Virus record (IMG/VR): IMGVR_UViG_3300027759_006101
Location: 124,001-188,000 of that record
Length of the DNA: 64,000 nucleotides
Strand: one strand, 5' to 3'
The notes under the pieces are model-generated. The model had not been told where the DNA came from and ran no database searches. It saw only the letters and a program-made list of their open reading frames with translations. Each line of letters starts with the position of its first letter. Position 1 is the first letter of the stretch. This document shows, in pieces, positions 29,665 through 51,914 of the stretch. A program made the position numbers and the translations under genes.

Positions 29665-29979
29665 TTAGTTACAATGATTAGTAAAGAGTTCATAGGATCC
29701 ACCTGTTTGCTTGTTCGCTATATCAATCATTTCATCCCAACTGGCTGTATATCCTATCATTCCCGACAACGCTGTAGACACTGTTTCATAACTACGTCCG
29801 ATCTTTTCACTTACAAAAACAGCTAACCGTCCATTATTAGTTGTTTTAGCATGTTTACCAGTTAATGGATTAACATATAACCATACGTCAGAGATCATAT
29901 TATCATAATCTACAGGGTACAATTCTGGATCTGCATTGTTCATATATCTTTTATAAAATATCTTGACATGTATATACAA
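29665..29979 (-). CDS. hypothetical protein (likely start ~29943)
   Basis: ORF divergent from 29997. Confidence 0.5.
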   Translation of the reverse strand: MYIHVKIFYKRYMNNADPELYPVDYDNMISDVWLYVNPLTGKHAKTTNNGRLAVFVSEKIGRSYETVSTALSGMIGYTASWDEMIDIANKQTGGSYELFTNHCN

Positions 29980-29991
29980 TATGATATAATA
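29963..29991 (+). promoter_or_regulatory. sigma70-type promoter, leaderless transcript
   Basis: TTGACA-N17-TATAAT with a TG extension, about 6 nt before ATG 29997; no SD. Confidence 0.8.
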
Positions 29992-29996
29992 CTTGT

Positions 29997-30197
29997 ATGG
30001 AAAACACTACAATCTCCCAATTCGTAAGCGACAACGTAGAAGGCGATCCAGCATTCAAAGGATACGTTGTCAGTGAGTTGAAGGATCTGGTAAAACAGAA
30101 TCCTACAATGTCACTTTCAGAGTTGCTTCAGGATGCAACGGAATCTGCCCTAGAACAATGGGATACAGACCAATATACAGACTACTACCAAGAGTAG
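29997..30197 (+). CDS. small acidic protein (MENTT start)
   Basis: Own promoter and terminator. Confidence 0.7.
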   Translation: MENTTISQFVSDNVEGDPAFKGYVVSELKDLVKQNPTMSLSELLQDATESALEQWDTDQYTDYYQE

Positions 30198-30342
30198 TCT
30201 GTACACAGCCCTTGACATTTGTCAAGGGCTTTATTATTTATTTTTTTATGCAAAGTGTTTATAGGAATGGTAAATACCATTCCTGAAAAAATTTGTCAAA
30301 TAAATTTTTTTACTTGACAAGATATTGGATATGTGGTAAGAC

Positions 30343-30537
30343 CTACATCTCCATTGCTTTTGCTTTTGCTCTTTCTTTGGCAGTTTGTGATTCTGCAAGT
30401 ATACGGTCTGCTTCAGCAAGGGTAAACTGATTCTTGACGCTGTTTTTAAGCATCCTATGCAGAATCTCCACATATGCTTTCTGCATTCCAACTTCCATGG
30501 CGAGTTCTGTGATGTGTTTCATTTCGTTCATGTACAT
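30343..30537 (-). CDS. hypothetical cassette protein
   Basis: Own minus-strand promoter. Confidence 0.6.
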   Translation of the reverse strand: MYMNEMKHITELAMEVGMQKAYVEILHRMLKNSVKNQFTLAEADRILAESQTAKERAKAKAMEM

Positions 30538-30637
30538 AATATATCACTTTGTATATATTATTGCAAGGCTTATTTAGTTAATAGATCATACATAAATAAG
30601 TATTGCAAAAGTGCATATTGTGCTGTAATATATAGAC

Positions 30638-30832
30638 ATGAACAAAGATACAAAAGTAGAACTAGAGTTTTCCACCAATCGTTTCTGGGAACTCTCCATG
30701 TCCGACCTTGGTTATACCGAAGGTATGACAGAAGAAGAATTCAATGCAAAGATTGCAGACTTCATCAACTCTGACGACTTTGAAACCAGGTACATACCTG
30801 AAACCAATGAACTGAAAGTCTACGCAGAGTAG
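30638..30832 (+). CDS. small acidic cassette protein
   Basis: Leaderless promoter, family A terminator. Confidence 0.7.
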   Translation: MNKDTKVELEFSTNRFWELSMSDLGYTEGMTEEEFNAKIADFINSDDFETRYIPETNELKVYAE

Positions 30833-31043
30833 ACTTATCATATCTCTTGACGAAAGTCAAGAGATATTTATTTAATTTATTTTTTGTTGTTTATCTTTAG
30901 GCACGGTAAATACCGTGCCTATAAAATTTTGTCAAATTTATTTTTACTACCACAGTCCAGACCCGTTGTCAAGAAAATAATTGTTTTTAGTTAATAACTA
31001 AATAAGTATTGCAATGTGATATAACTTGCTGTAATATATAGAC

Positions 31044-31511
31044 ATGGAAAACACTACTATGCAACTCTGGGAAGTCAAGGGCTTCGAGTCTTCTGCTGTC
31101 AAGGCTCTGCTCATCGGTAAGACCGCCAACGGTCAGGATTGTATTGGATGCGCTTGGGACGCAAACACTCTCTACGTTTACGCCTATGAAGGTATCGTAG
31201 ACACCTTCATGTACTACATGGAAAGATTCAATTCTGTAGGCAAGGCTATGGCATTCACCAAGTTGAAGGATGGTATGGAAGAAGGATTGTACTTTTCCCC
31301 TTACGCTTCCGGTAGAAAACTGCAAAACCATAACCAACTGTATGTCTTGCGCCGTTATGAGATGAAAAGTGCTATGACGGCTCACATTGTAGTACATCAA
31401 AACGTGTGCTTTGATACACCTGAGAATGCTATCAAAAACCTCATCTCATCTGGTGACCTTGAGGCAGAGCGTAGTTACTTTGTAGACTGTATGGCAAGAC
31501 GGGTAGTCTAA
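31044..31511 (+). CDS. cassette protein (MENTT start)
   Basis: Upstream sequence nearly the same as that of 30638. Confidence 0.75.
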   Translation: MENTTMQLWEVKGFESSAVKALLIGKTANGQDCIGCAWDANTLYVYAYEGIVDTFMYYMERFNSVGKAMAFTKLKDGMEEGLYFSPYASGRKLQNHNQLYVLRRYEMKSAMTAHIVVHQNVCFDTPENAIKNLISSGDLEAERSYFVDCMARRVV

Positions 31512-31664
31512 CCACTACCATATCCCTTGGCAAATGTCAAGGGATATTTATTTAAATATTTTTTTTGCAATCTATCTTAAGGTACGGTATTTACCGTACC
31601 TGAAAAATCTTGTCAAATAAATTTATTTTCTTGCATAGTATATACAATATGATATACTAACCCT

Positions 31665-31919
31665 ATGAGCAAAGTATACAGAATGATTCTTGGTCAAGAC
31701 CCTAACAGCACTAGACCTATTGGCACTGAGAAAACGCTTAAGGAAGCCAAAGAATATATCCTATCAAGGGCTTATAATAATGACTATTGTGCTATTTACG
31801 TAGCAGACAATGAGAATCCGGCTGGTGAATTGGTAGGACGTTGGATTATAAAGAATAAGAAACTTACATCGTTTGAAAAAAAATCAAAGCCAATTGATTA
31901 TAAAAAACAAATCTTTTGA
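31665..31919 (+). CDS. hypothetical cassette protein
   Basis: TTGCAT-N17-TATACT leaderless promoter. Confidence 0.7.
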   Translation: MSKVYRMILGQDPNSTRPIGTEKTLKEAKEYILSRAYNNDYCAIYVADNENPAGELVGRWIIKNKKLTSFEKKSKPIDYKKQIF

Positions 31920-31949
31920 CAGTTATATAAAAGGTGATATAATAACAGT

Positions 31950-32210
31950 ATGAACGATTACAACGGTTGGAAAAATGAAACTACTTGGACTGTCAATATC
32001 TTATTTATGGAAACTATTGAACAGCTGATAAAAGATGGATACGAGCTTGATGAAGTAGCCACACATATTTATCGTAAACTTGGCGCAGATGAAATGAATT
32101 GGTACGGTAGTCAGATTTTTGCAAGTGCGTGGAAGCAAATTGACTGGTGGACGCTTGTTGCCAGAGCAAAAGAAAATGTAGAAAAAGATGCTGTAAGTAT
32201 TGCAGAGTGA
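31950..32210 (+). CDS. conserved phage protein (YNGWxNxxTW motif)
   Basis: YNGWKNETTWTV...IDW. Confidence 0.75.
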   Translation: MNDYNGWKNETTWTVNILFMETIEQLIKDGYELDEVATHIYRKLGADEMNWYGSQIFASAWKQIDWWTLVARAKENVEKDAVSIAE

Positions 32211-32234
32211 TATAAATAAGGATACTATATAGAC

Positions 32235-32333
32235 ATGAACAATTTAGTACATTCTCTTCTCGTAGGTGCTGGTCTTTTGGTTCTTATGCTGGGTTTGCTT
32301 TCAACCCTAACATTGAACAAGCCAGCTGAATAA
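32235..32333 (+). CDS. 32-aa single-TM peptide (below ORF track cutoff)
   Basis: MNNLVHSLLVGAGLLVLMLGLLSTLTLNKPAE; TATATAGAC-ATG context as at 30638 and 31044. Confidence 0.6.
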   Translation: MNNLVHSLLVGAGLLVLMLGLLSTLTLNKPAE

Positions 32334-32467
32334 ATAAATCCCAAGAATTTTTCTTGGGATTTATCTTTAGGTCTGGTAGAGACCAGACCTTTAAAATATT
32401 GTCAAATTTATTTATTTTCTTGACAGGTATATACTTTATGATATACTGACTGAGTAAGGAAAAAGAT

Positions 32468-32758
32468 ATGGAAATTAAAACTACTGACTACGGTGTTTGC
32501 AAAGTGTCTAAAGGTTATTACCCTAGCAATGGTAATATGTGGTTAATTCTCACTGATGCTGATGGACAGCAAGTGACAGTTATTACCTCTAACATCATTC
32601 CTATGGCAGATGGTGAATTCTGTGGAAACATTACCAACATTGGCAAAATTCTGTGGAATGATATTCTTGCTTCTGGTCTTATCGAAGAGACTGGTGAGTT
32701 GGTTCAGTCAGGATTTGTCCAATTTCCTGTATGCAAGCTGGTCAAAGAACTAGCATAA
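32468..32758 (+). CDS. DUF4313-like protein
   Basis: GLIEETG..VQSGFVQFPV motif. Confidence 0.6.
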   Translation: MEIKTTDYGVCKVSKGYYPSNGNMWLILTDADGQQVTVITSNIIPMADGEFCGNITNIGKILWNDILASGLIEETGELVQSGFVQFPVCKLVKELA

Positions 32759-32909
32759 CTTCTACAACAAAGATAAATCTCAAGAAAAATTCTTGAGATT
32801 TATCTTTAGGTCTGGTATTTACCAGACCTTTATTTTTTTGTCAAATTTATTTATTTTCTTGACAGGTATATACAGTGTGATATACTATTCTTGTAAGGGA
32901 GTTAGACAG

Positions 32910-33131
32910 ATGACATATTCAGAATACATTGCGAAGTGTGAAGTCGCAAAGACAGCGTTTCAGTGCAATGTTACATCTTCACTTATAGTTGATAATGCAA
33001 CACCAGAAAAACGGTTGGAGTGGATTGCCGAAGACCTTGCAAAACTTAATGCAGAGTTGGAAGTGATTGGTAAGGCGTTTGATGAACAGGATGAGGTTGG
33101 TGACCCGTTTGTAGGCTTGGAGGCAAAGTAA
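32910..33131 (+). CDS. cassette protein A1
   Basis: GGGAG SD; paralog of 33533..33745 (WIAED/WIADD, GDPFV). Confidence 0.7.
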   Translation: MTYSEYIAKCEVAKTAFQCNVTSSLIVDNATPEKRLEWIAEDLAKLNAELEVIGKAFDEQDEVGDPFVGLEAK

Positions 33132-33391
33132 TGGCTGTTGAGACTATTGGTTATTGGAACGCTTCTTACATCTTTGAAAGTATTGAGTTGAAAGATGATG
33201 AGCAGGAGCAGTTTTTGGAAAAGTTCACTACAGGTGATGATCACACTTCATTGACATTGGTAAGCAGATACAAGTTTTTTACAATGTTGAAAGACTTTGT
33301 GAAGAATCTTGATGATCAGGAGCCACAAGAAGCAGTACTGGCAGTTCAACACTGGTATCCTGAAGCCAAGTATGTTAACGTAGAAGCATAA
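33131..33391 (+). CDS. cassette protein B1
   Basis: Paralog of 33745..34014. Confidence 0.7.
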   Translation: MAVETIGYWNASYIFESIELKDDEQEQFLEKFTTGDDHTSLTLVSRYKFFTMLKDFVKNLDDQEPQEAVLAVQHWYPEAKYVNVEA

Positions 33392-33532
33392 AAAGAAGAT
33401 AAATCCCAAGAAAAAATCTTGGGATTTATCTTTAGGTATGTGAATTACATACCTAAATTTTTTTGTCAAATATATTTATTTTCTTGACAGGTATATACAA
33501 TGTGATATACTATTCTTGTAAGGGAGTTAGAT

Positions 33533-33745
33533 ATGAACATTCAAGATTACGACAAAGTGAGAGCCACAGTTCTCAACGCATTGTACTGTAGCGTACAGTC
33601 TGCATTGGAGATGAACTATGTATCGGAAACCTGCAAGTTACACTGGATTGCAGATGACTTCAAAGTTGCAAAAGACAAGTTGCAAAAGATTGAAGAAGAG
33701 ATGCGAGTTTTGCTTGGAGACCCGTTTGTAGAAGAGGTAAAGTAA
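33533..33745 (+). CDS. cassette protein A2
   Basis: Paralog of 32910..33131. Confidence 0.7.
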   Translation: MNIQDYDKVRATVLNALYCSVQSALEMNYVSETCKLHWIADDFKVAKDKLQKIEEEMRVLLGDPFVEEVK

Positions 33746-34014
33746 TGGAAACAGTAGACTTTGTAAACGCAACGGAATTTTTTGATGGAATGGAACTTGG
33801 TCATGGTGAATCAGACGAGTTCCTTAGCAAGTTCACATATGGTGATATCCGCACTACATTCACCTTGGTAAGCCGTGGAACATTCCTTTCATATCTTAAG
33901 ACCTTCATTACTGATTGTGAAGACATCTATGAGAAAGATGTTGTGATGGAAGCATTGAGAGATTACAATCTTTCAGTTGATGTTCGCATTAAGTATGTAA
34001 ACATCGAAGCGTAA
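33745..34014 (+). CDS. cassette protein B2
   Basis: FL.KFT.GD..TLVSR..F...KYVN.EA shared with B1. Confidence 0.7.
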   Translation: METVDFVNATEFFDGMELGHGESDEFLSKFTYGDIRTTFTLVSRGTFLSYLKTFITDCEDIYEKDVVMEALRDYNLSVDVRIKYVNIEA

Positions 34015-34108
34015 TAAATAAATCCCAAGAAAAATTCTTGGGATTTATCTTTAGTTATGGTATAACCATAACTGAAAAAATTTGCAAGAAAAAAATCTTG
34101 CAATCTTT

Positions 34109-34327
34109 TCAGAAAGTTAATGGTCTTGTTTTAATAACCAATTCCATATCTTCAATATCACCTTGAGGAACGAATGTGCAAAAATTCTCAAAACACTCGC
34201 AATAAGGTGCCCAACCATTCCACCCTTTACATGATGGTTTACAATTGGTGCTTTCAAACTTATGCCATCTCTCTTCAGCCAGCAAAGCCGACCAAAGAGA
34301 GAGAGCCTTTTGCCTGTAATTGTTCAT
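34109..34327 (-). CDS. small Cys-containing protein
   Basis: Last gene of a 3-gene coupled operon. Confidence 0.6.
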   Translation of the reverse strand: MNNYRQKALSLWSALLAEERWHKFESTNCKPSCKGWNGWAPYCECFENFCTFVPQGDIEDMELVIKTRPLTF

Positions 34328-34563
34328 TTAAGTCTGTAACTCTTGTCTAGTCTTAATTCTATCACACCATTGTTGTCTTCGGTAGCACCACGGTAAACAT
34401 TATCGCCAACACGAACATAACAACGTACAAAGTTTCCAAATTGTTCCCAGAATAATGGTTTGCGCATCTTGCTGTATCGTTTACCATTATGAATTCCAAC
34501 GACTTGAATCTTGCTGTCAGTTACCCAACGTGTACCACCATTGTTCAAGTAATAATGCGCCAT
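34324..34563 (-). CDS. hypothetical protein
   Basis: Coupled ORF. Confidence 0.6.
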   Translation of the reverse strand: MAHYYLNNGGTRWVTDSKIQVVGIHNGKRYSKMRKPLFWEQFGNFVRCYVRVGDNVYRGATEDNNGVIELRLDKSYRLK

Positions 34564-34763
34564 TACTTATTAACTCCTCTTTGCGTGTAAAAGTTATTGC
34601 CATCGCACAGAATCCATTCTGTGCAGTACTTGGATGCATAGTACTCGCCCAAGTCGATTGGGTCACGTCCTGATGCAAGAAGGATTCCATTGTAGTGTGC
34701 AGTGTAGAGCATCTTTGGCACACGGCTCTTGAATTTTACGATTACCTTGTCTGTAGTGTTCAT
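34563..34763 (-). CDS. hypothetical protein
   Basis: Leaderless promoter upstream. Confidence 0.6.
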   Translation of the reverse strand: MNTTDKVIVKFKSRVPKMLYTAHYNGILLASGRDPIDLGEYYASKYCTEWILCDGNNFYTQRGVNK

Positions 34764-34871
34764 AGCAATAGTATATCATCTTGTGTATAGGATGCAAGAT
34801 ATATCTTTTAAAAATAGTTCTTGACACCCTATATAATAAGTGTTATACTTAAGCAGTAAGGAGTTAGAACA

Positions 34872-35075
34872 ATGGATTATATTGAAGCGGAGTTGGAAGC
34901 AAGAATTTTTCCTAGCGTTGATGTTGACCCAATGGATTATATGACGGATGAGGAACTGGATGAACAGTTCGACAATGAACCAGATTGTGATGACCAATGG
35001 GCTGATGCAAACGCTTTGGCATCAGCAGGCTGGGGAACTGATGAAGACTACGGTGGAGGCGATATCGAATGGTGA
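34872..35075 (+). CDS. very acidic small phage protein
   Basis: ALASAGWGTDEDYG; TTGACA promoter, AAGGAG SD. Confidence 0.75.
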   Translation: MDYIEAELEARIFPSVDVDPMDYMTDEELDEQFDNEPDCDDQWADANALASAGWGTDEDYGGGDIEW

Positions 35076-35219
35076 TATCATATCCCTTGACAAAAGTCAA
35101 GGGATATTTTTATTTAACAATATTCGTAAGGAATGGTATTTACCATTCCTATAAAAAAACCTCAAGAAAAATTCCTGAGGTTTTTTTTGGAAGTAATGCA
35201 AGCCCAAGTTTATTATACG

Positions 35220-35597
35220 TTAATAAACCCTTGATGTATGGCAAATTACAACATCACCAAACAAATGCACATTATCTCTCTTACAAAGTTTTTGGTAAAT
35301 TGCACTTGCTATCATGTTATAGTTACCAATCTCTACATCATCCTTGAACTTTGTTTTAAGCTGTCCTTCTTCATCACAAATGAAAATCACGGATTCATCA
35401 CCTGTGTATGCGATTTCAAAGTAATCGTAGTTAGCATCTGACTTGATTTTGTCAATATCAAAGTACTGGTTGCCATCTATAACTTTGTCAAATTCACGTT
35501 CCTTGATATCACCCTCTATAGAAATATAAAAGCCTCTGATGTTGTTGCGTACTTCTTCAAGAATACGCTCAATGTTTACCAATGCTACAATGTTCAT
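35220..35597 (-). CDS. DUF3846-like protein
   Basis: ICDEEGQLK..N.IAS..LFGDVVI. Confidence 0.6.
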   Translation of the reverse strand: MNIVALVNIERILEEVRNNIRGFYISIEGDIKEREFDKVIDGNQYFDIDKIKSDANYDYFEIAYTGDESVIFICDEEGQLKTKFKDDVEIGNYNMIASAIYQKLCKRDNVHLFGDVVICHTSRVY

Positions 35598-35743
35598 AAC
35601 TAACTCCTTACACTATGATTATATCAGGCTGTATATATTGTGCAATATATTTTAAATATTTGACAAAATTTTATAGGTACGGTATTTACCGTACCTTAAG
35701 ATAGTTCACAATAAAAAAATTCCCCATTTCTGGGGAACTTTTT

Positions 35744-36088
35744 TTACTTTGCGTAGTCAGTGCTTTGTCTGGTAGTGCTTCGGAACATTTCAGCTACTTT
35801 GAACGCTTCAGACAAGTATGCATGAATTGCACTAGTCAAAGCCAAAGATGATATGTTATTATCAGTGAGGGTTTTGATTGGCATAGAATATTTCAATTCT
35901 GTGTCATCATTGAGAAAATGGTATACATCTGCTTCTATAGCATCCATTGTTGGACTTATGACTATATCAATAACACCATTGCCATGTGCTACACTTAAGA
36001 CTATGTCTTTTTGACCAAATTCTATCGCTTGCTTTACAAACTCTTCGGTAGTGTCAACGCTCTTAAAACCGTTCTTAGAGAACAACAT
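35744..36088 (-). CDS. hypothetical protein
   Basis: Likely start MLFSK. Confidence 0.55.
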   Translation of the reverse strand: MLFSKNGFKSVDTTEEFVKQAIEFGQKDIVLSVAHGNGVIDIVISPTMDAIEADVYHFLNDDTELKYSMPIKTLTDNNISSLALTSAIHAYLSEAFKVAEMFRSTTRQSTDYAK

Positions 36089-36410
36089 ATTTGTATTGCT
36101 TCTTTCCTTGTAACTCTCTTGATGATTGTACCATAACCATCCACATAGTAGACAACAAACTAACTGTAGCAAGACCTGCTACAAACATCATTGTGGTGTC
36201 AATGTTGCCACCCAAGATGTATTCAATAATCATAGAAAATGGCGTGAGCAACAAAACGCTACACGTCATAACTGTTATACACTCAAGCAATGTATATAGT
36301 GCTTTAGGCATATGCTTTGTAATCTGCCAAAAAGCAACAATGCCACCAGTGTAAAGAAAAACCTGTATTGTTCTATTAATAATCTCTTCTGTCATCCTGC
36401 TACCTCCCAA
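36075..36410 (-). CDS. three-TM membrane protein
   Basis: Hydrophobic segments. Confidence 0.6.
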   Translation of the reverse strand: MGGSRMTEEIINRTIQVFLYTGGIVAFWQITKHMPKALYTLLECITVMTCSVLLLTPFSMIIEYILGGNIDTTMMFVAGLATVSLLSTMWMVMVQSSRELQGKKQYKYVVL

Positions 36411-36613
36411 TCTTCTGCCAATACATCTTCAGTCTTTAAAGTATAACAAGCCCAAAAACTCATTTCTTCACCAGTAGACCAAACACATTTAAATTTAAGT
36501 TCTGATTCTTCTAGTTTTACCAAGATAACATTAGTAGAATTAGGATTCCACTTTTTGCTTCTTGTGATAGTCTTACCATCACGGAGCATTGGCAATACCT
36601 GTTCAAGTTTCAT
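36392..36613 (-). CDS. DUF2829/Tad2-like protein
   Basis: LEQVLPMLRDGKTITRSKKW...EDVLAEDWEV. Confidence 0.65.
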   Translation of the reverse strand: MKLEQVLPMLRDGKTITRSKKWNPNSTNVILVKLEESELKFKCVWSTGEEMSFWACYTLKTEDVLAEDWEVAG

Positions 36614-36682
36614 AGAGTAAGTATATCATCTATCATATACTTGTCAATAAGAATTTTTGCCCCATTTTTACTGGGGCATTAT

Positions 36683-36964: not shown

Positions 36965-37117
36965 AGAGAAACCTTTCTGTTGTTGTTACATCCTGTAGTA
37001 TATCACATCGTACATATGATTAATTTTGAGTAAAAATTTTTTTTGATAAAATTTTGAAGTTATGGTAATACCATAACTAAAGATAAATCCCAAGATTTTT
37101 CTTGGGATTCTTTTAGT

Positions 37118-43635: not shown

Positions 43636-43638
43636 AGT

Positions 43639-45676: not shown

Positions 45677-45948
45677 ACAACAGTTAAGGGCTTTTCCTTA
45701 CTGACAAAGATAGTATAAGGCATACTTTAAAAGTGTGCAATAGAAATCGGGAGATATGTAACAAAAAAAGTTACCTATTTTAGAGCTGAAAAAAATATTT
45801 TGACAAATTTATAAAGGTGTGGTCTTTACCACACCTTAAGATAATTGTTAAATAAAAAACAGGCAAGTGGAGGGGTCTTGCCTGTTTTTTATTGCCTTAT
45901 TTGACTAAGGTCTGATAATATTATACATAATATTCAACGCAGATGCAC

Positions 45949-46203
45949 TTAGATTAAGAACTCTGTATTTGTTTTTTCTGAAATAATTTTGAATGTTTCA
46001 ATAAATCCATGATATTCAGGATTGCAGCAATAAAATTCCCTATTATTAGAATTACTAAATTTCAATAGATTCACTACCAGCTCCTGAAATTCATTTTCAG
46101 TTAGGTCTAGTTCTTTGAGAATTTTTGCACGGCTTTCTACATTTGTTGTTTGGTCAATAATGTAGATAAACCGTGCTATGTTTTTACGTAGATTGATAGT
46201 CAT
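45949..46203 (-). CDS. hypothetical protein
   Basis: Coupled to 46203..46550. Confidence 0.55.
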   Translation of the reverse strand: MTINLRKNIARFIYIIDQTTNVESRAKILKELDLTENEFQELVVNLLKFSNSNNREFYCCNPEYHGFIETFKIISEKTNTEFLI

Positions 46204-46550
46204 TAATAAAAAGCAACCAAGTAATGACCAGCATCAGCGTGAAGTCTAAACATCCTAGCAAGGTCTTTAAACTCTTGCTCTTCAATATCATAGTTTTGGA
46301 TGTAAGAATCTCGCCATTCAGTTTCTTCCAAGTCAGTTGCCATCTGCTTTACAGTTTCGTTTGAAATTTTGGAAGTTTTTGGGTCGCCATACAAACAAAC
46401 ACCAGTGACATCTTCTACAAAACGAGCATAAACTTTACCACGAAATGAAGAGTTTCCATTGTCAGAACATAGACCGCCACAGATGCAAAAATCGCCTTCT
46501 ACCATAGCGTCTTCGTTGTCATTTTTTTTCCAAAGGTTATCAAGTCCCAT
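46203..46550 (-). CDS. conserved phage protein (MGLD start)
   Basis: MGLD...SFRGKVY; AAGGAG SD. Confidence 0.65.
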   Translation of the reverse strand: MGLDNLWKKNDNEDAMVEGDFCICGGLCSDNGNSSFRGKVYARFVEDVTGVCLYGDPKTSKISNETVKQMATDLEETEWRDSYIQNYDIEEQEFKDLARMFRLHADAGHYLVAFY

Positions 46551-47121
46551 ATCGCTCTCCTTATGTGTATATAATAACGCATATATTGGGAGTTGTCAAA
46601 TAAAAATATCCCTCTTACTGAAAAGAGGGATATTTGTTGGCCTGCTAGATTATTGACTTAAGGGCAATATACCTATCAACATCTGGATGGTAAAAACAGA
46701 AATTTTTCTTTTTTTACTCCGTGAGAACCAAACTAGTTTCTTATTACTAAAAATGTTAAGAGTAAACCTTTTTAATTAAGAATTGCAAAATCATAACCAT
46801 CAGACCACTTGACAAAATTCTTCTTAATGACTGGGTCTGTAATACTATCAATAATCTTATTGATATTGATTTCATTAGCTAAAAAAGCATTCTTACCAAT
46901 AGCATCCTTGACAGCCTGGTAAGACTTGTCATCAAACTTCTTACGGAAATTAGAGAGGTGAATTTTCTTCAATTCATTTACCTTGAAACTTTATTTTGCA
47001 TTTTCATGCATAAGTATTTTATGAAAAAATTTGACAATTGTCAATAGGCATTGTACTACAATGCCTTAAGTATTTTGTCAAGATTATTCTCCCCTCCACT
47101 TCTGGAGGGGAGATAGTCAGG

Positions 47122-47607
47122 TTAGACTGTGACTGCGGATGGAAGGCTTTGCTTCAACAAGTCAATCAAAACCGCAACAGCATACTCACTGTTGACCTTG
47201 TGCGTCTTGATAAAGTCCGCAATGTATTCACTGCTTGCATTAGACTTTACTAGAATGTCAACAACCTCTTCAGGTGTAAAAGCCTTCAACTGGCTAGGCT
47301 TTGGCAAAGGTAGTTGACCAGCCGTTTCTTGACGTGATACCCGGTTCTTTGCCCAAGTTGCCCTAATCTTAGCATTGACCGCAGATTGGTTTCGGTTAGA
47401 CACCATTACGGAACACTTGACTTTGGTGTATTCCTCTTTGGTGTAACCCAAGAACTCATGGGCTGAGGTATACTCGGAGTAACGCTTAGGGTCAGCGTGA
47501 AAACTGAGACCTTCTGCCTTGACAGCATCGGAGTACTGTTTAATCGTCTTGAACTTACTGCCCATTGCATAGGACTTTGCATAACTGTACGGGTAAATAT
47601 CTTCCAT
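47122..47607 (-). CDS. protein with integrase-repeat-like N-terminal unit
   Basis: YSYAK...FKTIKQY...DP..Y.EY....EFLG. Confidence 0.5.
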   Translation of the reverse strand: MEDIYPYSYAKSYAMGSKFKTIKQYSDAVKAEGLSFHADPKRYSEYTSAHEFLGYTKEEYTKVKCSVMVSNRNQSAVNAKIRATWAKNRVSRQETAGQLPLPKPSQLKAFTPEEVVDILVKSNASSEYIADFIKTHKVNSEYAVAVLIDLLKQSLPSAVTV

Positions 47608-47808
47608 TTGGCTTCTCTCAACTAAGAACTAACTATGTTGTTCTTACACCAGTAGTATAACCTAACTACTATATGTTGTCAACAAACTATGCTATATATT
47701 TTAGAATATATTTTTTATTTGCATAAAAATTTCAGGAATGGTAATTACCATTCCTAGAGCTTATTGACAAAAAATTTTAGGATACACTTCATTGTGTATC
47801 CTAATTGT

Positions 47809-48141
47809 TTATTGACCAAGACCGAATATCTGTTTGATTATGTTACTAATCTTCCAGAATTTAACGGGCTTTTCTTCGTGGACGTTCTGGTCTTCTTGGA
47901 CAATTGAATCAATTTTACCAAGATAGTGAGCAGTACCAACCCACTCACCACGACGAGTATATACTTGATATGGATTGGTAGATAAACCATATGGCTTCTC
48001 TTCTCTCACCCATTCAGTATATTCTCTCATTGATTTGAATTTATACTTTTTGACAATAAGTCTGGCTTCATTATATGGAAGAACAAAATTCCATTCAGGA
48101 TTGCCAACCTTACGCTTATCCGAATCAACTGTTACACTCAT
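47809..48141 (-). CDS. stand-alone integrase-repeat-unit-like protein
   Basis: LPYNEAR..VKKYKFKS.REY.EW...P.QVY..RGEWVG..HYLG. Confidence 0.55.
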   Translation of the reverse strand: MSVTVDSDKRKVGNPEWNFVLPYNEARLIVKKYKFKSMREYTEWVREEKPYGLSTNPYQVYTRRGEWVGTAHYLGKIDSIVQEDQNVHEEKPVKFWKISNIIKQIFGLGQ

Positions 48142-48342
48142 TGTATGGCTTCCTTTCATTGATAGTATACTCGGATAATATATACATTGTCAACGTATTG
48201 GGAACACCAAAACAAATATTTTTAATAATAAAATCAGGCATTGTATACTCAATGCCTGAAAATAAAATGCAAATAAAAAATCCCTTCCAGAAAACACTAC
48301 TAAACTGGAAGGGATGAGACTCAATCTGTTTTATTATTTATC

Positions 48343-48633
48343 CTACCCCAAAGGCAAGTCAGATTGAGAAAACTTTAAATTGCCATACTCTTCTTGATAT
48401 GCTTGTATTGCTTCCAAGGCAAACTGATATCCATTAAGCTTATCCATAACTTGAGCATAAATATGATTGATACCGTAAAATTCCATCCACTCATTTTCAG
48501 TGTAATTAAAAGTGATGGTGACAGCAAAATTATTAAGACTTGTGCAAATCATCTGGTAACGCAGTTTGATTGGATATAATTTATTTAATTCATCCACTCT
48601 GTCTCTAATTTTATTTGCTTGTTCTAGTGTCAT
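48343..48633 (-). CDS. hypothetical protein
   Basis: Downstream of tRNA-Ser. Confidence 0.55.
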   Translation of the reverse strand: MTLEQANKIRDRVDELNKLYPIKLRYQMICTSLNNFAVTITFNYTENEWMEFYGINHIYAQVMDKLNGYQFALEAIQAYQEEYGNLKFSQSDLPLG

Positions 48634-48657
48634 AGTGTTTTATTTATTTATGGAATA

Positions 48658-48744
48658 AGGAAGAGACAGGATTCGAACCCGCACACCCCGTCAAGGGTGA
48701 GACCGCTTTCAAGGCGGTTGCAATACCATTCTGCTCACTCTTCC
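48658..48744 (-). tRNA. tRNA-Ser(TGA)
   Basis: GGAAGAG/CTCTTCC, ACCGC-CTTGAAA-GCGGT, long variable arm, GGGTTCGAATCC. Confidence 0.9.
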
Positions 48745-48754
48745 AATAGGTAAA

Positions 48755-48946
48755 TTATACCTCGTCTGCCATAAACTTGCTAATATCTTCACGGATTTCA
48801 ACAAGAACATCGTCAGATATATCTAACTTTTCAGCAAGCATATCAAATAATTCTGCATCAGCCAAGAGTAGTTTAAATCCCTCAAGAATGACCAGCAAAT
48901 CGTGTTCTGATTTGTCTGATAAATAGTTTAATGTATCGTTTGGCAT
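48755..48946 (-). CDS. small acidic protein
   Basis: 63-aa ORF with promoter. Confidence 0.55.
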   Translation of the reverse strand: MPNDTLNYLSDKSEHDLLVILEGFKLLLADAELFDMLAEKLDISDDVLVEIREDISKFMADEV

Positions 48947-49062
48947 AATATTTCTCTACAAACAATATATCATAAAGTTATAGCAGTGTCAAAAAAAATC
49001 CCCTCATATATTTCAATGAGGGGAGGAGTAGGACATGCAAAACACCAACCAACCAGAAACAA

Positions 49063-49135
49063 TGGGCGATGAGGGACTCGAACCCCCACTCAAGGGATTA
49101 TGAGTCCCCTGCTTTAACCATTAAGCTAATCGCCC
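49063..49135 (-). tRNA. tRNA(CAT), probably Ile2 (lysidine type)
   Basis: GGGCGAT/ATCGCCC; AGCAGGGGACTCATAATCCCTTG closely resembles enterobacterial Ile2 (AGCAGGCGACTCATAATCGCTTG). Confidence 0.85.
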
Positions 49136-49140
49136 CAAAA

Positions 49141-49203
49141 GGTGGAATGGGACTTACACCCATATCAAAGGTTTATTCCTCTGCTTTATTTAAGCTATCC
49201 ACC
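49141..49203 (-). pseudogene. degenerate tRNA-like cloverleaf
   Basis: GGTGGA/TCCACC, GCTT-AAATA-AAGC, AGAGG-AATAAA-CCTTT, ATGGG-TGTAAGT-CCCAT; non-canonical loops. Confidence 0.55.
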
Positions 49204-49452
49204 ATCAATAATTTCAAACCATTCGCCCTCAAAGAATCTTGATTTACATTTTTCGGTTTCTATTTCATAATGGTACTGAAAACCTGGATGCCATATAGAA
49301 GTATAACTGAAATAACCTTCGGAGCATTTATAAGTTCTAATGACATTCACTCCTTCTAAAAATTCATCTTTAATAACCTTATATTTACCCTTATATAGAT
49401 AAAGGGTTTGTGGTTTTACTGGAAAATCTACTTTTAGAAGAATGTCGTTCAT
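49195..49452 (-). CDS. hypothetical protein
   Basis: Likely start MNDILL. Confidence 0.5.
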   Translation of the reverse strand: MNDILLKVDFPVKPQTLYLYKGKYKVIKDEFLEGVNVIRTYKCSEGYFSYTSIWHPGFQYHYEIETEKCKSRFFEGEWFEIIDGG

Positions 49453-49590
49453 AATATTACCCAAGATGTGAGAAGAATGTAACGGGCATACGAACCATGT
49501 TATTTCCACTCTTCTCACATTTTTCCAGAATCACCACATTCTGAGTTTGTTCTTGATGCTGTAATCACCTTGAACAAATATAGCATATCA

Positions 49591-49827
49591 TTAATCTATG
49601 TAGTCCACAACAAGTTTTTTGGAAACTTCTTTGGTTCCATTATATGTTCTAATGAAATCAATATCACCCTCATCATTAATTTCAAGAACTAGAAATTTTG
49701 GCTCATACTTTTTTTCTTTAGTATGTTGTTCGATAAAGGCATTGAGATAACTGTAATTTTCAAAAGTCAATTTGATGATAATGTCAAAATCATCTGTGAC
49801 TTCATATAATACGTGTTTCATATACAA
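49591..49827 (-). CDS. hypothetical protein
   Basis: 78-aa ORF. Confidence 0.55.
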   Translation of the reverse strand: MYMKHVLYEVTDDFDIIIKLTFENYSYLNAFIEQHTKEKKYEPKFLVLEINDEGDIDFIRTYNGTKEVSKKLVVDYID

Positions 49828-49851
49828 GTGTACATTAAGAAAACACTATTG

Positions 49852-50448
49852 TCAAGGTTTATAATCTTTGGAGATTACTTTATTAAATTGCCTAGGGTCA
49901 TACCAATAGCATCCAACACAAGTGCCTGCATAATTAGACTCTCCAACAATCCATCCAAATGAATAACCAAGCCTTTTTGCATCGTATCTTTCATTTGTTT
50001 CCTCACACGTCTTACAATGAGTTCTCTTTGATAAATTTACGTTCCTCAATAATGGCTGAAAATCATCTTCATTTTGATTTTCTACGCTATTATAAGTATC
50101 AGAACTATATCGTCCGTCTTTATGGTCACACTCGATATTTTCTCCACCAACATCAACAACACGGCATCTTTGTTTTCTTATTGATTTGAAAATATCAGTT
50201 CGTATACGTTTTTCAATTGATGTTTCTCTATAACCATCAAGACGAATTCCTATAGTGCGATTTTTATCTTTTTCTCTATGAACAATGAAATCTTTTAATT
50301 GTCCATCAGAGCGGTTCCAATCTCCACCATTTTTAGTTTGGAATTCTACGCCGGGATATAAAGTTTCCAATTCACTATATAGCCAAAGACGAGTTTTACC
50401 ATCACTATCTGGTTGTGACGCTTGAAGAAACATTTGTACTTTTGTCAT
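49852..50448 (-). CDS. NlaIII/IceA1-like HNH restriction endonuclease
   Basis: FL...PD.DG.TR, NGG.W.R, IE.DHKDGR, DFQPL, KR..CK.C..T..R.DA and CVGCY.YDP match the IceA1/NlaIII pattern. Confidence 0.75.
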   Translation of the reverse strand: MTKVQMFLQASQPDSDGKTRLWLYSELETLYPGVEFQTKNGGDWNRSDGQLKDFIVHREKDKNRTIGIRLDGYRETSIEKRIRTDIFKSIRKQRCRVVDVGGENIECDHKDGRYSSDTYNSVENQNEDDFQPLLRNVNLSKRTHCKTCEETNERYDAKRLGYSFGWIVGESNYAGTCVGCYWYDPRQFNKVISKDYKP

Positions 50449-51139
50449 TTAATTTAGCGATTCTCTCTGTTGCTTTTGTGTAATAAGTTTCATCCAATTC
50501 ACAACCCATAAAGTTTCGTCCAGTGTTATAGCAAGCCACTGCACAAGAAGCAGAGCCAGCAAAACAATCCAAAACAGTATCGCCTTCATTGGAGTGTTTG
50601 GTAATTAAAGCTTGCAGTAAATTGAGAGGCTTTTGAGTAGGATGGAAACGGTCTCTCTCATGACAGATTGCAAACTCATAAATTCCCTTATCATATTGAG
50701 AATGAAATGTTGGTTTACTTCCTTTGATAGCAGTAAGGGCTATCTCTCTTGAATTGGTGAGATAATTAATCTTCGAATTGATAGGAACAGGATTTGTCTT
50801 TACCCATTCAATAAACCGGAGTTGCTTAAACTTGGCACTCTCAATCCAATTCTTAAGAGTCTCGATTTTCCACAAGTCATAGAAACAAATTAATGTTCCA
50901 CCTGGCTTGAGGATACGATAAGATTCTTCCATAACCTTATCAAGAACAAAGATTTCATTATCCCACTCTCCAAATTCATAGGACATCTTAAATCTTTCAA
51001 CACCCTTCTCTCCACAACTCTCGAATCCTGTTGCTCGTGAAATTGTATATGGTGGGTCAATCAAAACAAGATTTACTGATTTATCTGCAACACGAGGCAA
51101 AAAATCAAGACAAGATTCATTATTTAAAACGATAGACAT
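50405..51139 (-). CDS. N4/N6 DNA methyltransferase (beta class), likely cognate of the adjacent nuclease
   Basis: IDPPY, HPTQKP, VLDCFAGSAS; overlaps the nuclease start. Confidence 0.9.
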   Translation of the reverse strand: MSIVLNNESCLDFLPRVADKSVNLVLIDPPYTISRATGFESCGEKGVERFKMSYEFGEWDNEIFVLDKVMEESYRILKPGGTLICFYDLWKIETLKNWIESAKFKQLRFIEWVKTNPVPINSKINYLTNSREIALTAIKGSKPTFHSQYDKGIYEFAICHERDRFHPTQKPLNLLQALITKHSNEGDTVLDCFAGSASCAVACYNTGRNFMGCELDETYYTKATERIAKLNDKSTNVSSSVTTR

Positions 51140-51319
51140 TTGGCTTCCTCTTATTCATAATACGATATATCTTTAGGGTATGCAAGTTTAAAAAATTATT
51201 TGATCAATATTTTTAGGAATGGTATTTACCATTCCTTAAGAATAATTGCAAAAAAATCCCTCTTCCTATGAGCGAAGAAGAGGGATAGAACACAGAATTA
51301 TGAGCGGATTCTGTGTACT

Positions 51320-51814
51320 CTATTCTATCACAAGAAATTCAGTTGACAAGTCTTCTTTTTGGACAGGCTTTTCAGTGACAAAATAACTTTCTCGATTTAC
51401 CCAATGGCATCCAGAGATTACAACAAAGCAATCATCAGAATCAACCATTGTCCAAATGTTTTCTGGATTCTGCTTCTTTACAAATTCCCATTGGTCATCT
51501 TCAGAGTAATCGAAAGAACATCCCTCGAAACTAGTTTCCTCGAATTGATTCTTTAATGGTTTGTATTTCTCAACCCATTCATCATAGGTAAATACTCTCC
51601 TAAGAGAAAGAATATTCATCTCTGTCACTTCACAAATACCAACCTCATAATTGCCAATAAATGAATTAATATATTCTTCAGCAATCAATTTATCTTCGGT
51701 ATTGGTTGTTTGGATATACCCTTGCTTTTCAACATTTATAATTGGCTTACCGGGATATTTCCAACTAAACTTAACATTGACTTCGTAGGTTGGGGTAATA
51801 ATAGTGTTTTCCAT
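51320..51814 (-). CDS. phage protein (MENT start)
   Basis: IWTMVD...SG.HWVNR.YFVTEKP is typical of phage hypotheticals. Confidence 0.7.
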   Translation of the reverse strand: MENTIITPTYEVNVKFSWKYPGKPIINVEKQGYIQTTNTEDKLIAEEYINSFIGNYEVGICEVTEMNILSLRRVFTYDEWVEKYKPLKNQFEETSFEGCSFDYSEDDQWEFVKKQNPENIWTMVDSDDCFVVISGCHWVNRESYFVTEKPVQKEDLSTEFLVIE

Positions 51815-51914
51815 ACCTGTATTATATCATATGTTGTATGTACTGCAATAGGAAATCCCCTTCTTGTCGGAGAAGGGGATTGGTTTCACTTGTGGAGATA
51901 AGACAAGTGAAAAG

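What the first reader, a model, noticed from the sequence alone, without database searches (positions are those of the whole stretch)
29963..51845. Self-contained, largely leaderless cassettes with reused promoter+start modules (MENTT)
Seen: many ORFs start about 5-8 nt after a TATAAT/TATACT/TAATAT box with no SD (29997, 30638, 31044, 31665, 31950, 39590, 40824, 51814). Unrelated proteins begin with the same DNA, ATGGAAAACACTA (29997, 31044, 40824, 51814). AAATAAGTATTGCAA...TGCTGTAATATATAGACATG is shared by 30638 and 31044. Other genes share AGGAGTT or GGGAGTT. Inference: new coding sequence is captured behind a recycled expression head, so recombination joins extend into the first codons.
Basis: partly seen in the sequence, partly recalled or inferred. 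Interest (0 to 1): 0.6.

Follow-up and report, generated by a model that had tools for sequence, protein, structure and literature searches.

The report
Reused leaderless start modules in phage
A freshwater giant phage keeps about 50 small early genes as separate promoter-to-terminator cassettes; about half of the first genes appear to start translation at the very first base of the mRNA, and unrelated genes share the same 14-base promoter-linked start, which has been swapped between genes by recombination.

Summary
The window is part of a 358-kb freshwater jumbo-phage record. Window 29.9-52.3 kb is a hyperplastic block of about 50 small, mostly orphan ORFs in self-contained cassettes.

Fourteen ORFs start with ATG exactly 6 nt after a sigma-70-type -10 box, never GTG or TTG. 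That predicts a transcription start at the A of AUG. Twelve other promoter-proximal ORFs use the same promoters plus a conserved 15-nt leader, GTAAGGAGTTAGnn.

ATGGAAAACACTA occurs four times in the whole genome, each time at a leaderless head. Across IMG/VR this head precedes 64 distinct ORFs in 21 unrelated families.

Codons 2-4 (GAA AAC ACT) never change synonymously among orthologues, although AAC is the minor Asn codon. Heads and ORF bodies have separate histories: 95-97% identical orthologues sit behind unrelated promoters, with identity switching on at the ATG, and one promoter (96% identical) fronts unrelated ORFs.

Cassettes are separated by a terminator, a covarying hairpin (AGGnnnGGTAnnTACCnnnCCT, 20 copies) and TTGTCAAAT.

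The closest known system is the PeSL regulatory cassettes of T4-type phages. I class this as a new variant: leaderless, with a coding start that belongs to the head. Transcription starts are predicted, not measured.

The parts
29943..52340 (.). Hyperplastic early-gene block: about 50 small ORFs in mono- or bicistronic cassettes on both strands, with 4 tRNA genes interspersed
   Evidence: ORF map and upstream contexts. Only a handful of the 50 ORFs match Pfam at or above the curated cut-offs. Terminator-like sites 47 versus 10.9 expected. tRNAs.
29963..30197 (+). Leaderless cassette: -35 TTGACA 29963, TGn TATAAT 29985-29990, 6 nt, ATG 29997; 66 aa, MENTTI
   Evidence: orthologues lie behind at least 4 different promoter types
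30603..30832 (+). Leaderless cassette: TTGCAA-17-TAATAT-atagac-ATG 30638; 64 aa, MNKDTK
   Evidence: the G003 orthologue is 97% identical in protein and 56% in promoter, with the break at the ATG
31009..31511 (+). Leaderless cassette: TTGCAA-17-TAATAT-atagac-ATG 31044; 155 aa, MENTTM
   Evidence: first 18 nt invariant in 8 orthologues of 54-97% identity
31631..31919 (+). Leaderless cassette: TTGCAT-16-TATACT-aaccct-ATG 31665; 84 aa
31916..32210 (+). Leaderless cassette: TTGACA-16-TATAAT-aacagt-ATG 31950; 86 aa
32200..32333 (+). Leaderless cassette: TTGCAG-17-TACTAT-atagac-ATG 32235; 32 aa, hydrophobic; its promoter lies inside the end of the preceding ORF
   Evidence: (D16)
39556..39832 (+). 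Leaderless cassette: extended -10 TGaTATAAT 39578-39583, 6 nt, ATG 39590; 80 aa. It is divergent from 39527(-), and the two share one palindromic -35 region
40789..41189 (+). Leaderless cassette: TTGCAA-17-TATATT-acaggt-ATG 40824; 121 aa, MENTTA
   Evidence: the G005 orthologue carries the same ATGGAAAAC start behind an SD leader
30343..30566 (-). Leaderless cassette: TTGCAA-17-TATATT-atgtac-ATG 30531; 62 aa
34563..34797 (-). Leaderless cassette heading a three-gene unit: TTGCAT-16-TATACT-attgct-ATG 34763; 66 aa, MNTTD (ATGAACACTAC, the head without GAA)
36392..36647 (-). Leaderless cassette: TTGACA-16-TATACT-tactct-ATG 36613; 73 aa, Tad2-like (Thoeris anti-defence) protein; first gene of a polycistronic unit
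   Evidence: Pfam PF11195, E 4e-9, full length
39267..39562 (-). Leaderless cassette: TTGCAC-17-TATATT-agtgct-ATG 39527; 86 aa
40074..40363 (-). Leaderless cassette: TTGCAT-17-TAATAT-attgct-ATG 40328; 84 aa
51320..51848 (-). Leaderless cassette: TTGCAG-16-TATAAT-acaggt-ATG 51814; 164 aa, MENTII
32420..32758 (+). SD-led cassette: TTGACA-16-TATACT, 6-nt discriminator, leader GTAAGGAAAAAGAT, ATG 32468
32859..33391 (+). SD-led two-gene cassette (ATG 32910 and 33131), leader GTAAGGGAGTTAGACAG; paralogue of the next cassette
33484..34014 (+). SD-led two-gene cassette (ATG 33533 and 33745); tandem paralogue of 32859-33391
   Evidence: (E 1.5e-5 and 8e-18)
34821..35075 (+). SD-led cassette, leader GTAAGGAGTTAGAACA, ATG 34872; divergent from 34763(-)
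35220..35646 (-). SD-led cassette, TTGCAC-16-TATAAT, leader GTAAGGAGTTAGTT, ATG 35597
37118..37498 (-). SD-led cassette, TTGCAT-16-TATACT, leader GTAAGGAGTTTGAT, ATG 37450
   Evidence: (D17)
37803..38128 (-). SD-led cassette, TTGACA-17-TATACT, ATG 38075
41514..41874 (-). SD-led cassette, TTGACA-16-TATACT, leader GTAAGGAGTTAGGAT, ATG 41825
46203..46599 (-). SD-led cassette, TTGACA-17-TATTAT, ATG 46550
30207..30310 (+). Inter-cassette module, copy 1: intrinsic terminator hairpin 30207-30230 with T-run, hairpin H2 30263-30284, TTGTCAAAT 30293-30301. One boundary of a two-cassette deletion variant seen in run X8
30840..30946 (+). Inter-cassette module, copy 2: terminator 30840-30867, H2 30899-30920, TTGTCAAAT. 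It is duplicated on both sides of an extra cassette in relative L009
31520..31630 (+). Inter-cassette module, copy 3: terminator 31520-31547, H2 31580-31601, TTGTCAAAT, AT-rich stretch, then the -35
32369..32390 (+). H2 hairpin copy
32808..32829 (+). H2 hairpin copy
35129..35150 (+). H2 hairpin copy
35675..35696 (-). H2 hairpin copy
37529..37550 (-). H2 hairpin copy
38747..38768 (-). H2 hairpin copy
39833..39854 (+). H2 hairpin copy
41904..41925 (-). H2 hairpin copy
42403..42424 (-). H2 hairpin copy (GATA/TATC variant)
44151..44172 (-). H2 hairpin copy
45815..45836 (-). H2 hairpin copy
47734..47755 (-). H2 hairpin copy
51215..51236 (-). H2 hairpin copy
52276..52297 (-). H2 hairpin copy
53144..53165 (-).
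54503..54524 (-). H2 hairpin copy, between rIIA and rIIB
56796..56817 (-). H2 hairpin copy, upstream of rIIA
61251..61454 (-). Outlying leaderless head: TGaTATAAT-acagct-ATGGAAAACATT at 61442; 63 aa, MENIKW

Best explanation
This is the hyperplastic early-gene region of a freshwater jumbo phage that uses the host RNA polymerase. It is built from about 30 autonomous transcription units.

Each unit is bounded by a composite module of roughly 130 nt. In order, the module holds an intrinsic terminator, a second structure-conserved hairpin (H2), TTGTCAAAT, an AT-rich stretch and a sigma-70-type promoter, usually with an extended -10.

After a 6-nt discriminator the promoter runs into one of two things. 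One is the ATG itself, giving an mRNA whose first base is the A of AUG, which is translated without a Shine-Dalgarno sequence. The other is a fixed 15-nt leader, GUAAGGAGUUAGnn, followed by AUG.

Because the modules are repeated, the phage's own recombination system (it encodes a RecA/UvsX homologue) can exchange, delete and insert cassettes, and can swap promoter heads between ORF bodies.

One head type includes the first 14 transcribed and translated bases, AUGGAAAACACUAC. This segment is kept at the nucleotide level as an unstructured, A-rich 5' end that suits leaderless initiation. It also supplies the only homology available for a crossover between a promoter and a foreign ORF. That is how unrelated proteins come to start with MENTT.

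Shown from sequence: the architecture, its enrichment over chance, its conservation in relatives, the incongruence between heads and bodies, and the covariation in the hairpin. Inferred: the transcription start at the ATG, early timing, leaderless translation, and the position of the crossovers.
For: Architecture and statistics:
- Exact 6-nt spacing at 14 heads.
- The d=6 peak has 22 cases against about 8 elsewhere, with 13 of them in 6% of the genome.
- These starts are only ATG, never GTG or TTG.
- Ten of the 14 have a TGn extended -10.

Conservation:
- Orthologues of 54-97% identity keep the leaderless spacing even where the promoter has been replaced.
- Substitutions fall preferentially on third codon positions, which shows the ORFs are coding.

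The shared head:
- It occurs 4 of 4 times at leaderless heads in the genome.
- IMG/VR holds 79 such heads, 64 distinct ORFs and 21 unrelated families.
- ATGGAAAAC starts 28 of 66 leaderless ORFs against 1 of 102 SD-led ORFs.
- Synonymous changes in codons 2-5 are 0 of 112, against 33% elsewhere, in the 155-aa family.
- AAC is the minor Asn codon at 23%.
- The first 36 nt fold at -1.3 kcal/mol, against -4.05 for internal windows, p about 1e-5.

Recombination:
- Heads 96% identical sit before unrelated ORFs.
- Orthologues 95-97% identical sit behind unrelated promoters, with a sharp switch in identity at the ATG.
- Paralogues differ only in their heads.
- An extra cassette in L009 is flanked by duplicated modules.
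- A two-cassette deletion variant in lake run X8 is bounded by two modules.
- Promoter spacers and H2 stems are homogenised within genomes: G003 promoters, and the G004/G005 hairpins.
- A RecA/UvsX gene is present in the genome, E 2e-43.

Host RNA polymerase:
- No RNAP beta homologue was found, and there are three sigma-70-family genes elsewhere in the genome.

H2 hairpin:
- 20 copies, 100% of cells paired, 21 compensatory cells, 0 of 500 shuffles as high.
Against: - There are no 5'-end data. The only RNA run is held as contigs.
- The host is unknown, so the rule that the transcription start lies 7 nt after the -10 is borrowed from E. coli-type polymerases.
- The 14-mer is not strictly linked to one promoter or discriminator type. 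For example, 'atagac' precedes both MENTT and MN... starts, and the 66-aa family keeps MENTT behind five promoter types. The 14-mer could therefore be maintained, or even arise, by selection alone rather than travelling with the head.
- Fourteen nt is short for homologous recombination.
- One orthologue has the same MENTT start behind an SD leader, so the start is not obligatorily leaderless.
- Conserved promoter spacers contain palindromes: TGTATATACA here and TGACATATGTCA in G003. Regulator binding, rather than gene conversion, could explain their within-genome uniformity.
Confidence: 0.62

Rival explanations
1. Convergent or purifying selection only. AUGGAAAACACUAC, and the related AUGAAC... 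starts, are an optimal 5' end for leaderless transcripts, favouring promoter escape and 70S binding with no secondary structure. Each ORF acquired or kept the sequence independently. Recombination moves whole cassettes or promoters, but the first codons are not part of a mobile head.
For: - Synonymous invariance of codons 2-4 among orthologues.
- Use of the rare AAC codon at all leaderless N codons.
- An unstructured, 50% A start region.
- A graded series of related starts: ATGGAAAACACTAC, ATGAACACTAC, ATGAACAAA, ATGGAAAACCTT.
- MENTT is retained behind five different promoters in one family, and behind an SD leader in G005.
- The discriminator type is not linked to MENTT.
Against: - Identity of all 14 nt in 21 unrelated families is far more than known leaderless determinants require. 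By established knowledge these are a 5'-terminal AUG and low structure.
- Many other leaderless heads in the same genomes work with different starts, such as MSKVY, MKLEQ, MRTVL and MGIF.
- Paralogues differ exactly by a head swap.
- Identity blocks run uninterrupted from -45 to +17 between unrelated genes.
Confidence: 0.25
2. MENTT is a functional N-terminal peptide tag shared by a set of early proteins, for example for targeting, stability or packaging. This would resemble the shared N-terminal capsid-targeting sequence of the T4 internal proteins.
For: - The same five residues begin 21 unrelated families.
- The start is conserved even when the promoter, or the leader type, changes.
- The analogy to the T4 internal-protein loci rests on my own knowledge and was not tested here.
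Against: - A constraint acting only on the peptide would allow synonymous codons, yet GAA AAC ACT is invariant although AAC is used for only 23% of Asn and ACT for 46% of Thr.
- The motif is tied to the leaderless architecture, 28 of 66 against 1 of 102.
- Family members tolerate MENTI, MENII, MEKTT and MNTT.
- Five residues is very short for a targeting signal.
Confidence: 0.07
3. The promoter-like boxes next to the ATGs are an annotation coincidence in AT-rich DNA. On this view the genes are transcribed from upstream promoters and translated in the conventional way.
For: - The genome is 33-36% GC, so TAnnnT hexamers are common. The loose consensus scan finds 111 promoter-like sites against 73 in shuffles.
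- There is no direct RNA evidence.
Against: - The peak at exactly d=6 is concentrated in this block.
- Only ATG occurs at that distance.
- No SD lies upstream.
- A terminator and the H2 module lie immediately upstream of most heads.
- The spacing is conserved in relatives despite promoter turnover.
Confidence: 0.05

Closest known systems
PeSL (promoter-early stem-loop) regulatory cassettes in the hyperplastic regions of T4-type phages (Arbiol et al. 2010, PMC2839356; Comeau et al. 2014, PMC4122927)
   Same: - Repeated composite motifs confined to a hyperplastic region.
- Each motif combines an AT-rich stretch, a strong sigma-70-like early promoter, a stem-loop that acts as a terminator, and the start of the downstream small orphan ORF.
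- Related phages differ by insertions, deletions and replacements of cassettes bounded by the motifs.
- Crossovers were mapped between the -10 and the ATG in that system, matching the breaks at the ATG seen here.
   Different: - About half of the heads have no Shine-Dalgarno sequence and put the ATG at the predicted +1. PeSLs end in an SD plus a start codon.
- One head type extends 14 nt into the coding sequence and is shared by 21 unrelated families.
- The stem-loops lie upstream of the -35, not within the promoter, and come as a pair: a variable terminator plus a conserved, covarying H2.
- A TTGTCAAAT box is present.
- The phage is a 358-kb freshwater jumbo phage with no close cultured relative.
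- Mini-circles were not tested.
Leaderless mRNAs, such as lambda cI from PRM; ribosomes recognise the 5'-terminal AUG (Brock et al. 2008, cited in PMC5312081)
   Same: - The ATG lies at the predicted transcription start.
- Only ATG is used.
- There is no SD.
- The downstream region is A/C-rich and unstructured.
   Different: - Known phage cases are single genes. Here 14 genes in one block, and 79 heads across relatives, use the design.
- TSS maps of the jumbo phages AR9 and phiKZ reported no leaderless transcripts.
- The 5' ends here are predicted, not measured.
T4 internal-protein loci, where unrelated genes share a promoter and an N-terminal capsid-targeting sequence and are shuffled (own knowledge; the IP loci are mentioned in PMC2839356 and PMC4122927)
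   Same: Unrelated proteins begin with the same short sequence, which is contiguous with a conserved early promoter. The shared 5' segment is thought to support shuffling.
   Different: The T4 sequence is a roughly 10-residue peptide signal cleaved by the prohead protease. Here the constraint acts on nucleotides over 5 codons and is tied to the leaderless architecture.
Integron gene cassettes with attC hairpins, and REP-type extragenic palindromes (working analogies only)
   Same: Small cassettes are each accompanied by an imperfectly conserved palindrome. Its stem is kept by compensatory change, while the outer and inner boxes stay constant.
   Different: - No integrase was identified.
- The cassettes carry their own promoters.
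- H2 is 22 nt, far shorter than attC.
- No evidence of site-specific recombination.

Membership tests
PeSL regulatory cassettes (T4-type phages) | Repeated composite motif confined to hyperplastic regions rich in small orphan ORFs | tested here: met
   All 20 H2 copies lie in genome 154.2-180.8 kb of 358 kb. Strong promoters cluster at window 29.9-49 kb. Only a handful of the 50 ORFs match Pfam at or above the curated cut-offs.
PeSL regulatory cassettes (T4-type phages) | Sigma-70-like early promoter with an AT-rich upstream region | tested here: met
   TTGACA/TTGCAA, 16-17 nt, (TGn)TATAAT/TATACT, preceded by AAATTTATTTTC-type tracts. This is met by sequence only; promoter activity was not assayed.
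PeSL regulatory cassettes (T4-type phages) | Stem-loop acting as terminator or attenuator, usually between the -35 and -10 or overlapping the -10 | tested here: not met
   Stem-loops are present (47 terminator-like sites against 10.9 expected; H2). They lie 35-100 nt upstream of the -35, not inside the promoter.
PeSL regulatory cassettes (T4-type phages) | Shine-Dalgarno sequence and start codon at the 3' end of the motif | tested here: inconclusive
   Twelve heads have the SD leader. Fourteen have no SD and no leader.
PeSL regulatory cassettes (T4-type phages) | Indels and replacements between related phages bounded by the motifs | tested here: met
   The L009 insertion is flanked by a duplicated module. 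The X8 variant skips from 30310 to 30966. Promoter replacement shows a break at the ATG.
PeSL regulatory cassettes (T4-type phages) | Formation of cassette mini-circles by recombination between flanking motifs | not testable with these tools
   This needs inverse PCR or raw long reads. Only contigs were available.
Leaderless mRNA | Transcript 5' end at, or within a few nt of, the start codon | not testable with these tools
   It is predicted from the invariant 6-nt discriminator. The RNA run X24 is held as contigs, which cannot show starts.
Leaderless mRNA | The start codon is AUG, since leaderless initiation depends on a 5'-terminal AUG | tested here: met
   At d=6 in the block: ATG 13, GTG 0, TTG 0.
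Leaderless mRNA | No Shine-Dalgarno sequence upstream and an unstructured start region | tested here: met
   Only the promoter lies upstream. Mean MFE of the first 36 nt is -1.3 kcal/mol, against -4.05 for internal windows.

The most novel reading that the evidence does not exclude
The 14-nt 5'-terminal AUGGAAAACACUAC is a portable cis-element with two roles. As RNA, it is a specific recognition site at the very 5' end of leaderless early mRNAs, either for the ribosome or for a phage-encoded translational regulator or RNase. That would put some 20 or more unrelated early genes under one post-transcriptional switch. As DNA, together with the covarying H2 hairpin, it is the joining site of a phage gene-capture system that places foreign ORFs in frame behind a ready-made promoter. 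This would amount to a promoter-bearing, integron-like cassette system in jumbo phages.
Probability: 0.15. Interest if true: 0.85.

Novelty: new variant of a known kind. Interest (0 to 1): 0.6.

Why it matters
Small early phage genes are where anti-defence and host-takeover functions are found. One of these leaderless cassettes encodes a Tad2-like anti-Thoeris protein.

This locus suggests how a giant phage can test new genes quickly. Any ORF recombined behind a standard head is transcribed and translated without needing its own ribosome-binding site.

It also offers a natural data set for an open question, namely what makes a leaderless mRNA translate well in bacteria. There are 79 heads and 21 protein families, with matched SD-led versions of the same promoters and even of the same ORF.

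The compact parts could also serve as expression elements: a promoter with a 6-nt discriminator followed by ATG, a 15-nt leader, and a double-hairpin insulator.

Tried and rejected
- Megablast of 6.1 kb against cultured phages found no match. tblastn with rIIA found only distant hits below 30% identity. There is therefore no annotated relative to lean on.
- Rfam at gathering threshold found only the 9 tRNAs.
- I used the single run search and the single read-laying run on 6,000 bases. All four runs were contigs, so no 5' ends could be read.
- Most 'joints' and 'loose ends' are contigs from other copies of the repeated modules mapping across. For example, the X7 loose end after 30009 is simply the 51814 gene. 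I did not count these as variants. I kept only the X8 skip from 30310 to 30966, which has 90 nt on its shorter side.
- BLAST blocks between the window and L005/L009 end at 31667, right at an ATG. I first read this as the same head carrying different ORFs. The alignment shows those promoters are only about 75% alike, like any two modules. It is a whole-cassette replacement, and I rejected it as evidence for a join at the ATG.
- H2 as an ordinary intrinsic terminator is rejected: no U-run follows it on either strand.
- The search for a RegA-type translational repressor (PF01818) found nothing, but the control genomes did not match either, so it is uninformative.
- No claim here rests on the absence of relatives.
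- I made no attempt to identify the host. The sigma-70-type boxes and the strong AAGGAG leader argue, from general knowledge, against a Bacteroidota-type expression system.

Full report
**Context.** The window is bases 124,001-188,000 of a 358,269-bp IMG/VR virus record estimated 89% complete.
- It has 33-36% GC and 9 tRNA genes in the window.
- rIIA and rIIB lie at 53.2-56.8 kb.
- The genome carries a RecA/UvsX homologue, three sigma-70-family genes and no detectable RNAP beta subunit.
- No cultured phage is close.
- Near-identical DNA is held by many freshwater and lake metagenome runs.

The phage therefore looks like a jumbo phage that depends on the host RNA polymerase, at least early in infection.

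**The observation.** Reading the sequence and every candidate ORF with its upstream 70 nt shows a regular layout between about 29.9 and 52.3 kb. Two kinds of promoter-proximal start occur.

1. *Leaderless starts.*
   - The ATG lies exactly 6 nt after the -10 hexamer.
   - There are 14 firm cases: 29997, 30638, 31044, 31665, 31950, 32235, 39590 and 40824 on +, and 30531, 34763, 36613, 39527, 40328 and 51814 on -.
   - There is one weak case at 29943 (-).
   - Ten of the 14 have a TGn extended -10.

2. *SD-led starts.*
   - The same kind of promoter and 6-nt discriminator is followed by a conserved leader, GTAAGGAGTTAGnn, and then ATG.
   - There are 12 cases.

With the usual transcription start 7 nt after the -10, the first class gives mRNAs that begin with AUG. 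The second class gives mRNAs with a 14-17-nt leader that begins with GUAAGGAG.

The statistics show the spacing is not chance:
- The genome-wide distribution of -10-to-ATG distance peaks at 6, with 22 cases against about 8 at other distances.
- Thirteen of those 22 fall in this 6% of the genome.
- At that distance only ATG is found in the block, with no GTG or TTG.

**The shared coding start.**
- ATGGAAAACACTA occurs four times in the genome, against about 0.03 expected. All four are at leaderless heads.
- The four proteins (66, 155, 121 and 164 aa) are unrelated by BLASTP. They are also unrelated by profile-profile comparison using orthologue alignments, beyond the first 4-10 residues.
- Relatives recovered from IMG/VR keep both the 6-nt spacing and the start.
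- A collection-wide scan for '-10, 6 nt, ATGGAAAACACTAC' found 79 heads on 40 stretches. They precede 64 distinct ORFs falling into 21 BLAST-unrelated families.
- In an unbiased set of 66 leaderless heads defined by the promoter alone, 28 start with ATGGAAAAC and 21 with ATGAAC. Among 102 SD-led starts, 1 starts with ATGGAAAAC.

**The constraint acts on nucleotides.**
- Among orthologues of the 155-aa family (51-97% protein identity), codons 2-5 show 0 synonymous differences in 112 comparisons, against 33% for the rest of the gene.
- Across three families, GAA AAC ACT never changes synonymously.
- AAC is the minor Asn codon (23%), and ACT accounts for 46% of Thr.
- The first 36 nt of the leaderless mRNAs are predicted to be almost unstructured: -1.3 against -4.05 kcal/mol for internal windows, p about 1e-5. 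They are also 50% A.
- The ORFs are real genes, because substitutions between orthologues fall mostly on third codon positions.

**Heads and bodies have separate histories.**
- The head of the window's 155-aa gene is 96% identical over -45..-1, and identical for the first 17 coding nt, to the head of the unrelated 66-aa family in L005/L011.
- The 66-aa family itself sits behind at least four promoter types in different phages.
- Orthologues 95-97% identical in protein have upstream regions 44-56% identical. In pairwise alignments the identity switches on at the ATG.
- Two paralogues are 57% identical from residue 7/11 onward but begin MENTTA... and MNTQQAQAAT....
- The 121-aa ORF is leaderless in the window. 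In G005 the 15-nt SD leader sits between the discriminator and the same ATGGAAAAC.
- Promoter spacers are uniform within a genome and differ between genomes. Many G003 promoters contain TGACATATGTCA, while many here contain TGTATATACA. This points either to gene conversion or to co-evolution with a genome-specific regulator.

**The inter-cassette module.**
- Downstream of most cassettes lies an intrinsic terminator (47 terminator-like sites against 10.9 expected).
- Next comes a second hairpin, AGGnnnGGTAnnTACCnnnCCT, then about 8 nt, TTGTCAAAT, an AT-rich stretch and the next -35.
- Twenty copies of this hairpin exist, all between genome 154.2 and 180.8 kb.
- All 180 stem cells pair. Four stem positions show compensatory changes in 21 cells, and 0 of 500 shuffles reach that level.
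- The hairpin is not followed by a U-run on either strand, so it is not a standard terminator.
- In G004/G005 every copy carries the same GAT/ATC stem, which again indicates concerted evolution.
- The module marks the boundaries of cassette gain and loss. L009 has an extra cassette flanked by two copies of the module. A lake-metagenome contig lacks the two cassettes between the modules at 30.26-30.31 and 30.90-30.95 kb.

**Gene content.**
- Of 50 ORFs scanned, only a few have known domains.
- These are a Tad2-like anti-Thoeris protein (a leaderless cassette at 36613), an IceA-like endonuclease overlapping an N6/N4 DNA methylase, a Cro/C1-type HTH, a GHKL-type ATPase in a GC-richer segment, and a TPR protein.
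- This fits an accessory, anti-defence and host-takeover block.

**Comparison with known systems.**
- The layout and the evolutionary behaviour match the PeSL cassettes of T4-type phages. Those are composite terminator-promoter motifs in hyperplastic regions that flank orphan ORFs and mediate modular shuffling, with crossovers mapped between the -10 and the ATG.
- The differences are the leaderless design of half the heads, the 14-nt coding extension shared by many families, the position and pairing of the stem-loops, the TTGTCAAAT box, and the phage lineage.
- TSS maps of the jumbo phages AR9 and phiKZ found no leaderless transcripts.
- A full-text search linking leaderless starts to hyperplastic early promoters found nothing relevant.

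**Verdict.**
Selection on the 5' end of a leaderless mRNA explains the same invariance, and both probably act together.
- The transcription starts remain predictions.

Noticed in passing
window 28827-29118: Three direct copies of a roughly 74-nt element, spaced 103 and 115 nt apart. Each starts with an AT-rich TATATATAAT-like box and AGGGCAAAAAGGATG and ends in ACCACCCCCC(C). Further C/G runs follow to about 29230. It lies just outside the cassette block, and Rfam has no match.
   Followed up: no
window 36392-36613 (-): A leaderless cassette encodes a 73-aa protein that matches the Thoeris anti-defence Tad2-like domain over its full length (PF11195, E 4e-9). It is conserved in relative G003.
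   Followed up: partly
window 49852-51139 (-): Overlapping genes for an N6/N4 DNA methylase (244 aa, E 4.5e-32) and an IceA-family endonuclease-like protein (198 aa, E 2.8e-30). This looks like a restriction-modification-like pair carried inside the phage's accessory block.
   Followed up: no
window 36683-36964 (-): A 93-aa ORF with a Cro/C1-type helix-turn-helix. I assigned it by eye to the HTH_3 match. It is a candidate regulator for the palindromes in the promoter spacers: TGTATATACA in this genome and TGACATATGTCA in relative G003.
   Followed up: no
window 39527-39590: Two divergent leaderless genes lie only 62 bp apart. Their promoters share one palindromic -35 region, TTGCACA / TGTGCAA at 39556-39562. 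Similar back-to-back pairs occur at 29943/29997, 30531/30638 and 34763/34872.
   Followed up: partly
window 44252-45676 (-): A 470-aa protein with a GHKL-type ATPase domain (HATPase_c_3, E 1e-8) sits in a segment of 42% GC, against about 35% around it. It has low codon-usage fit (score 0.013 per codon) and may be a recent acquisition.
   Followed up: no
window 32859-34014 (+): A tandem duplication of a two-gene SD-led cassette. The pairs 32910/33131 and 33533/33745 are 28% and 38% identical, and their promoters and leaders are almost identical (D7, 17).
   Followed up: partly
window 48658-52198 (-): Four tRNA genes (Ser-tga, Met-cat, Lys-ttt, Leu-taa) are interspersed among the cassettes of the hyperplastic block. 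Five more lie at 9.2-13.3 kb.
   Followed up: no
G000:C1:69060-69236, 203693-203887, 220003-220200 (outside the window): There are three sigma-70-family region-2 matches in the phage genome and no RNA polymerase beta homologue. This suggests stepwise redirection of the host polymerase.
   Followed up: no
G004 and G005 (L031-L033): Every H2 hairpin copy in these two contigs, which come from one metagenome, carries the same variable stem (AGGGATGGTAnnTACCATCCCT). The window's genome has seven stem variants. This indicates within-genome homogenisation of the element.
   Followed up: partly
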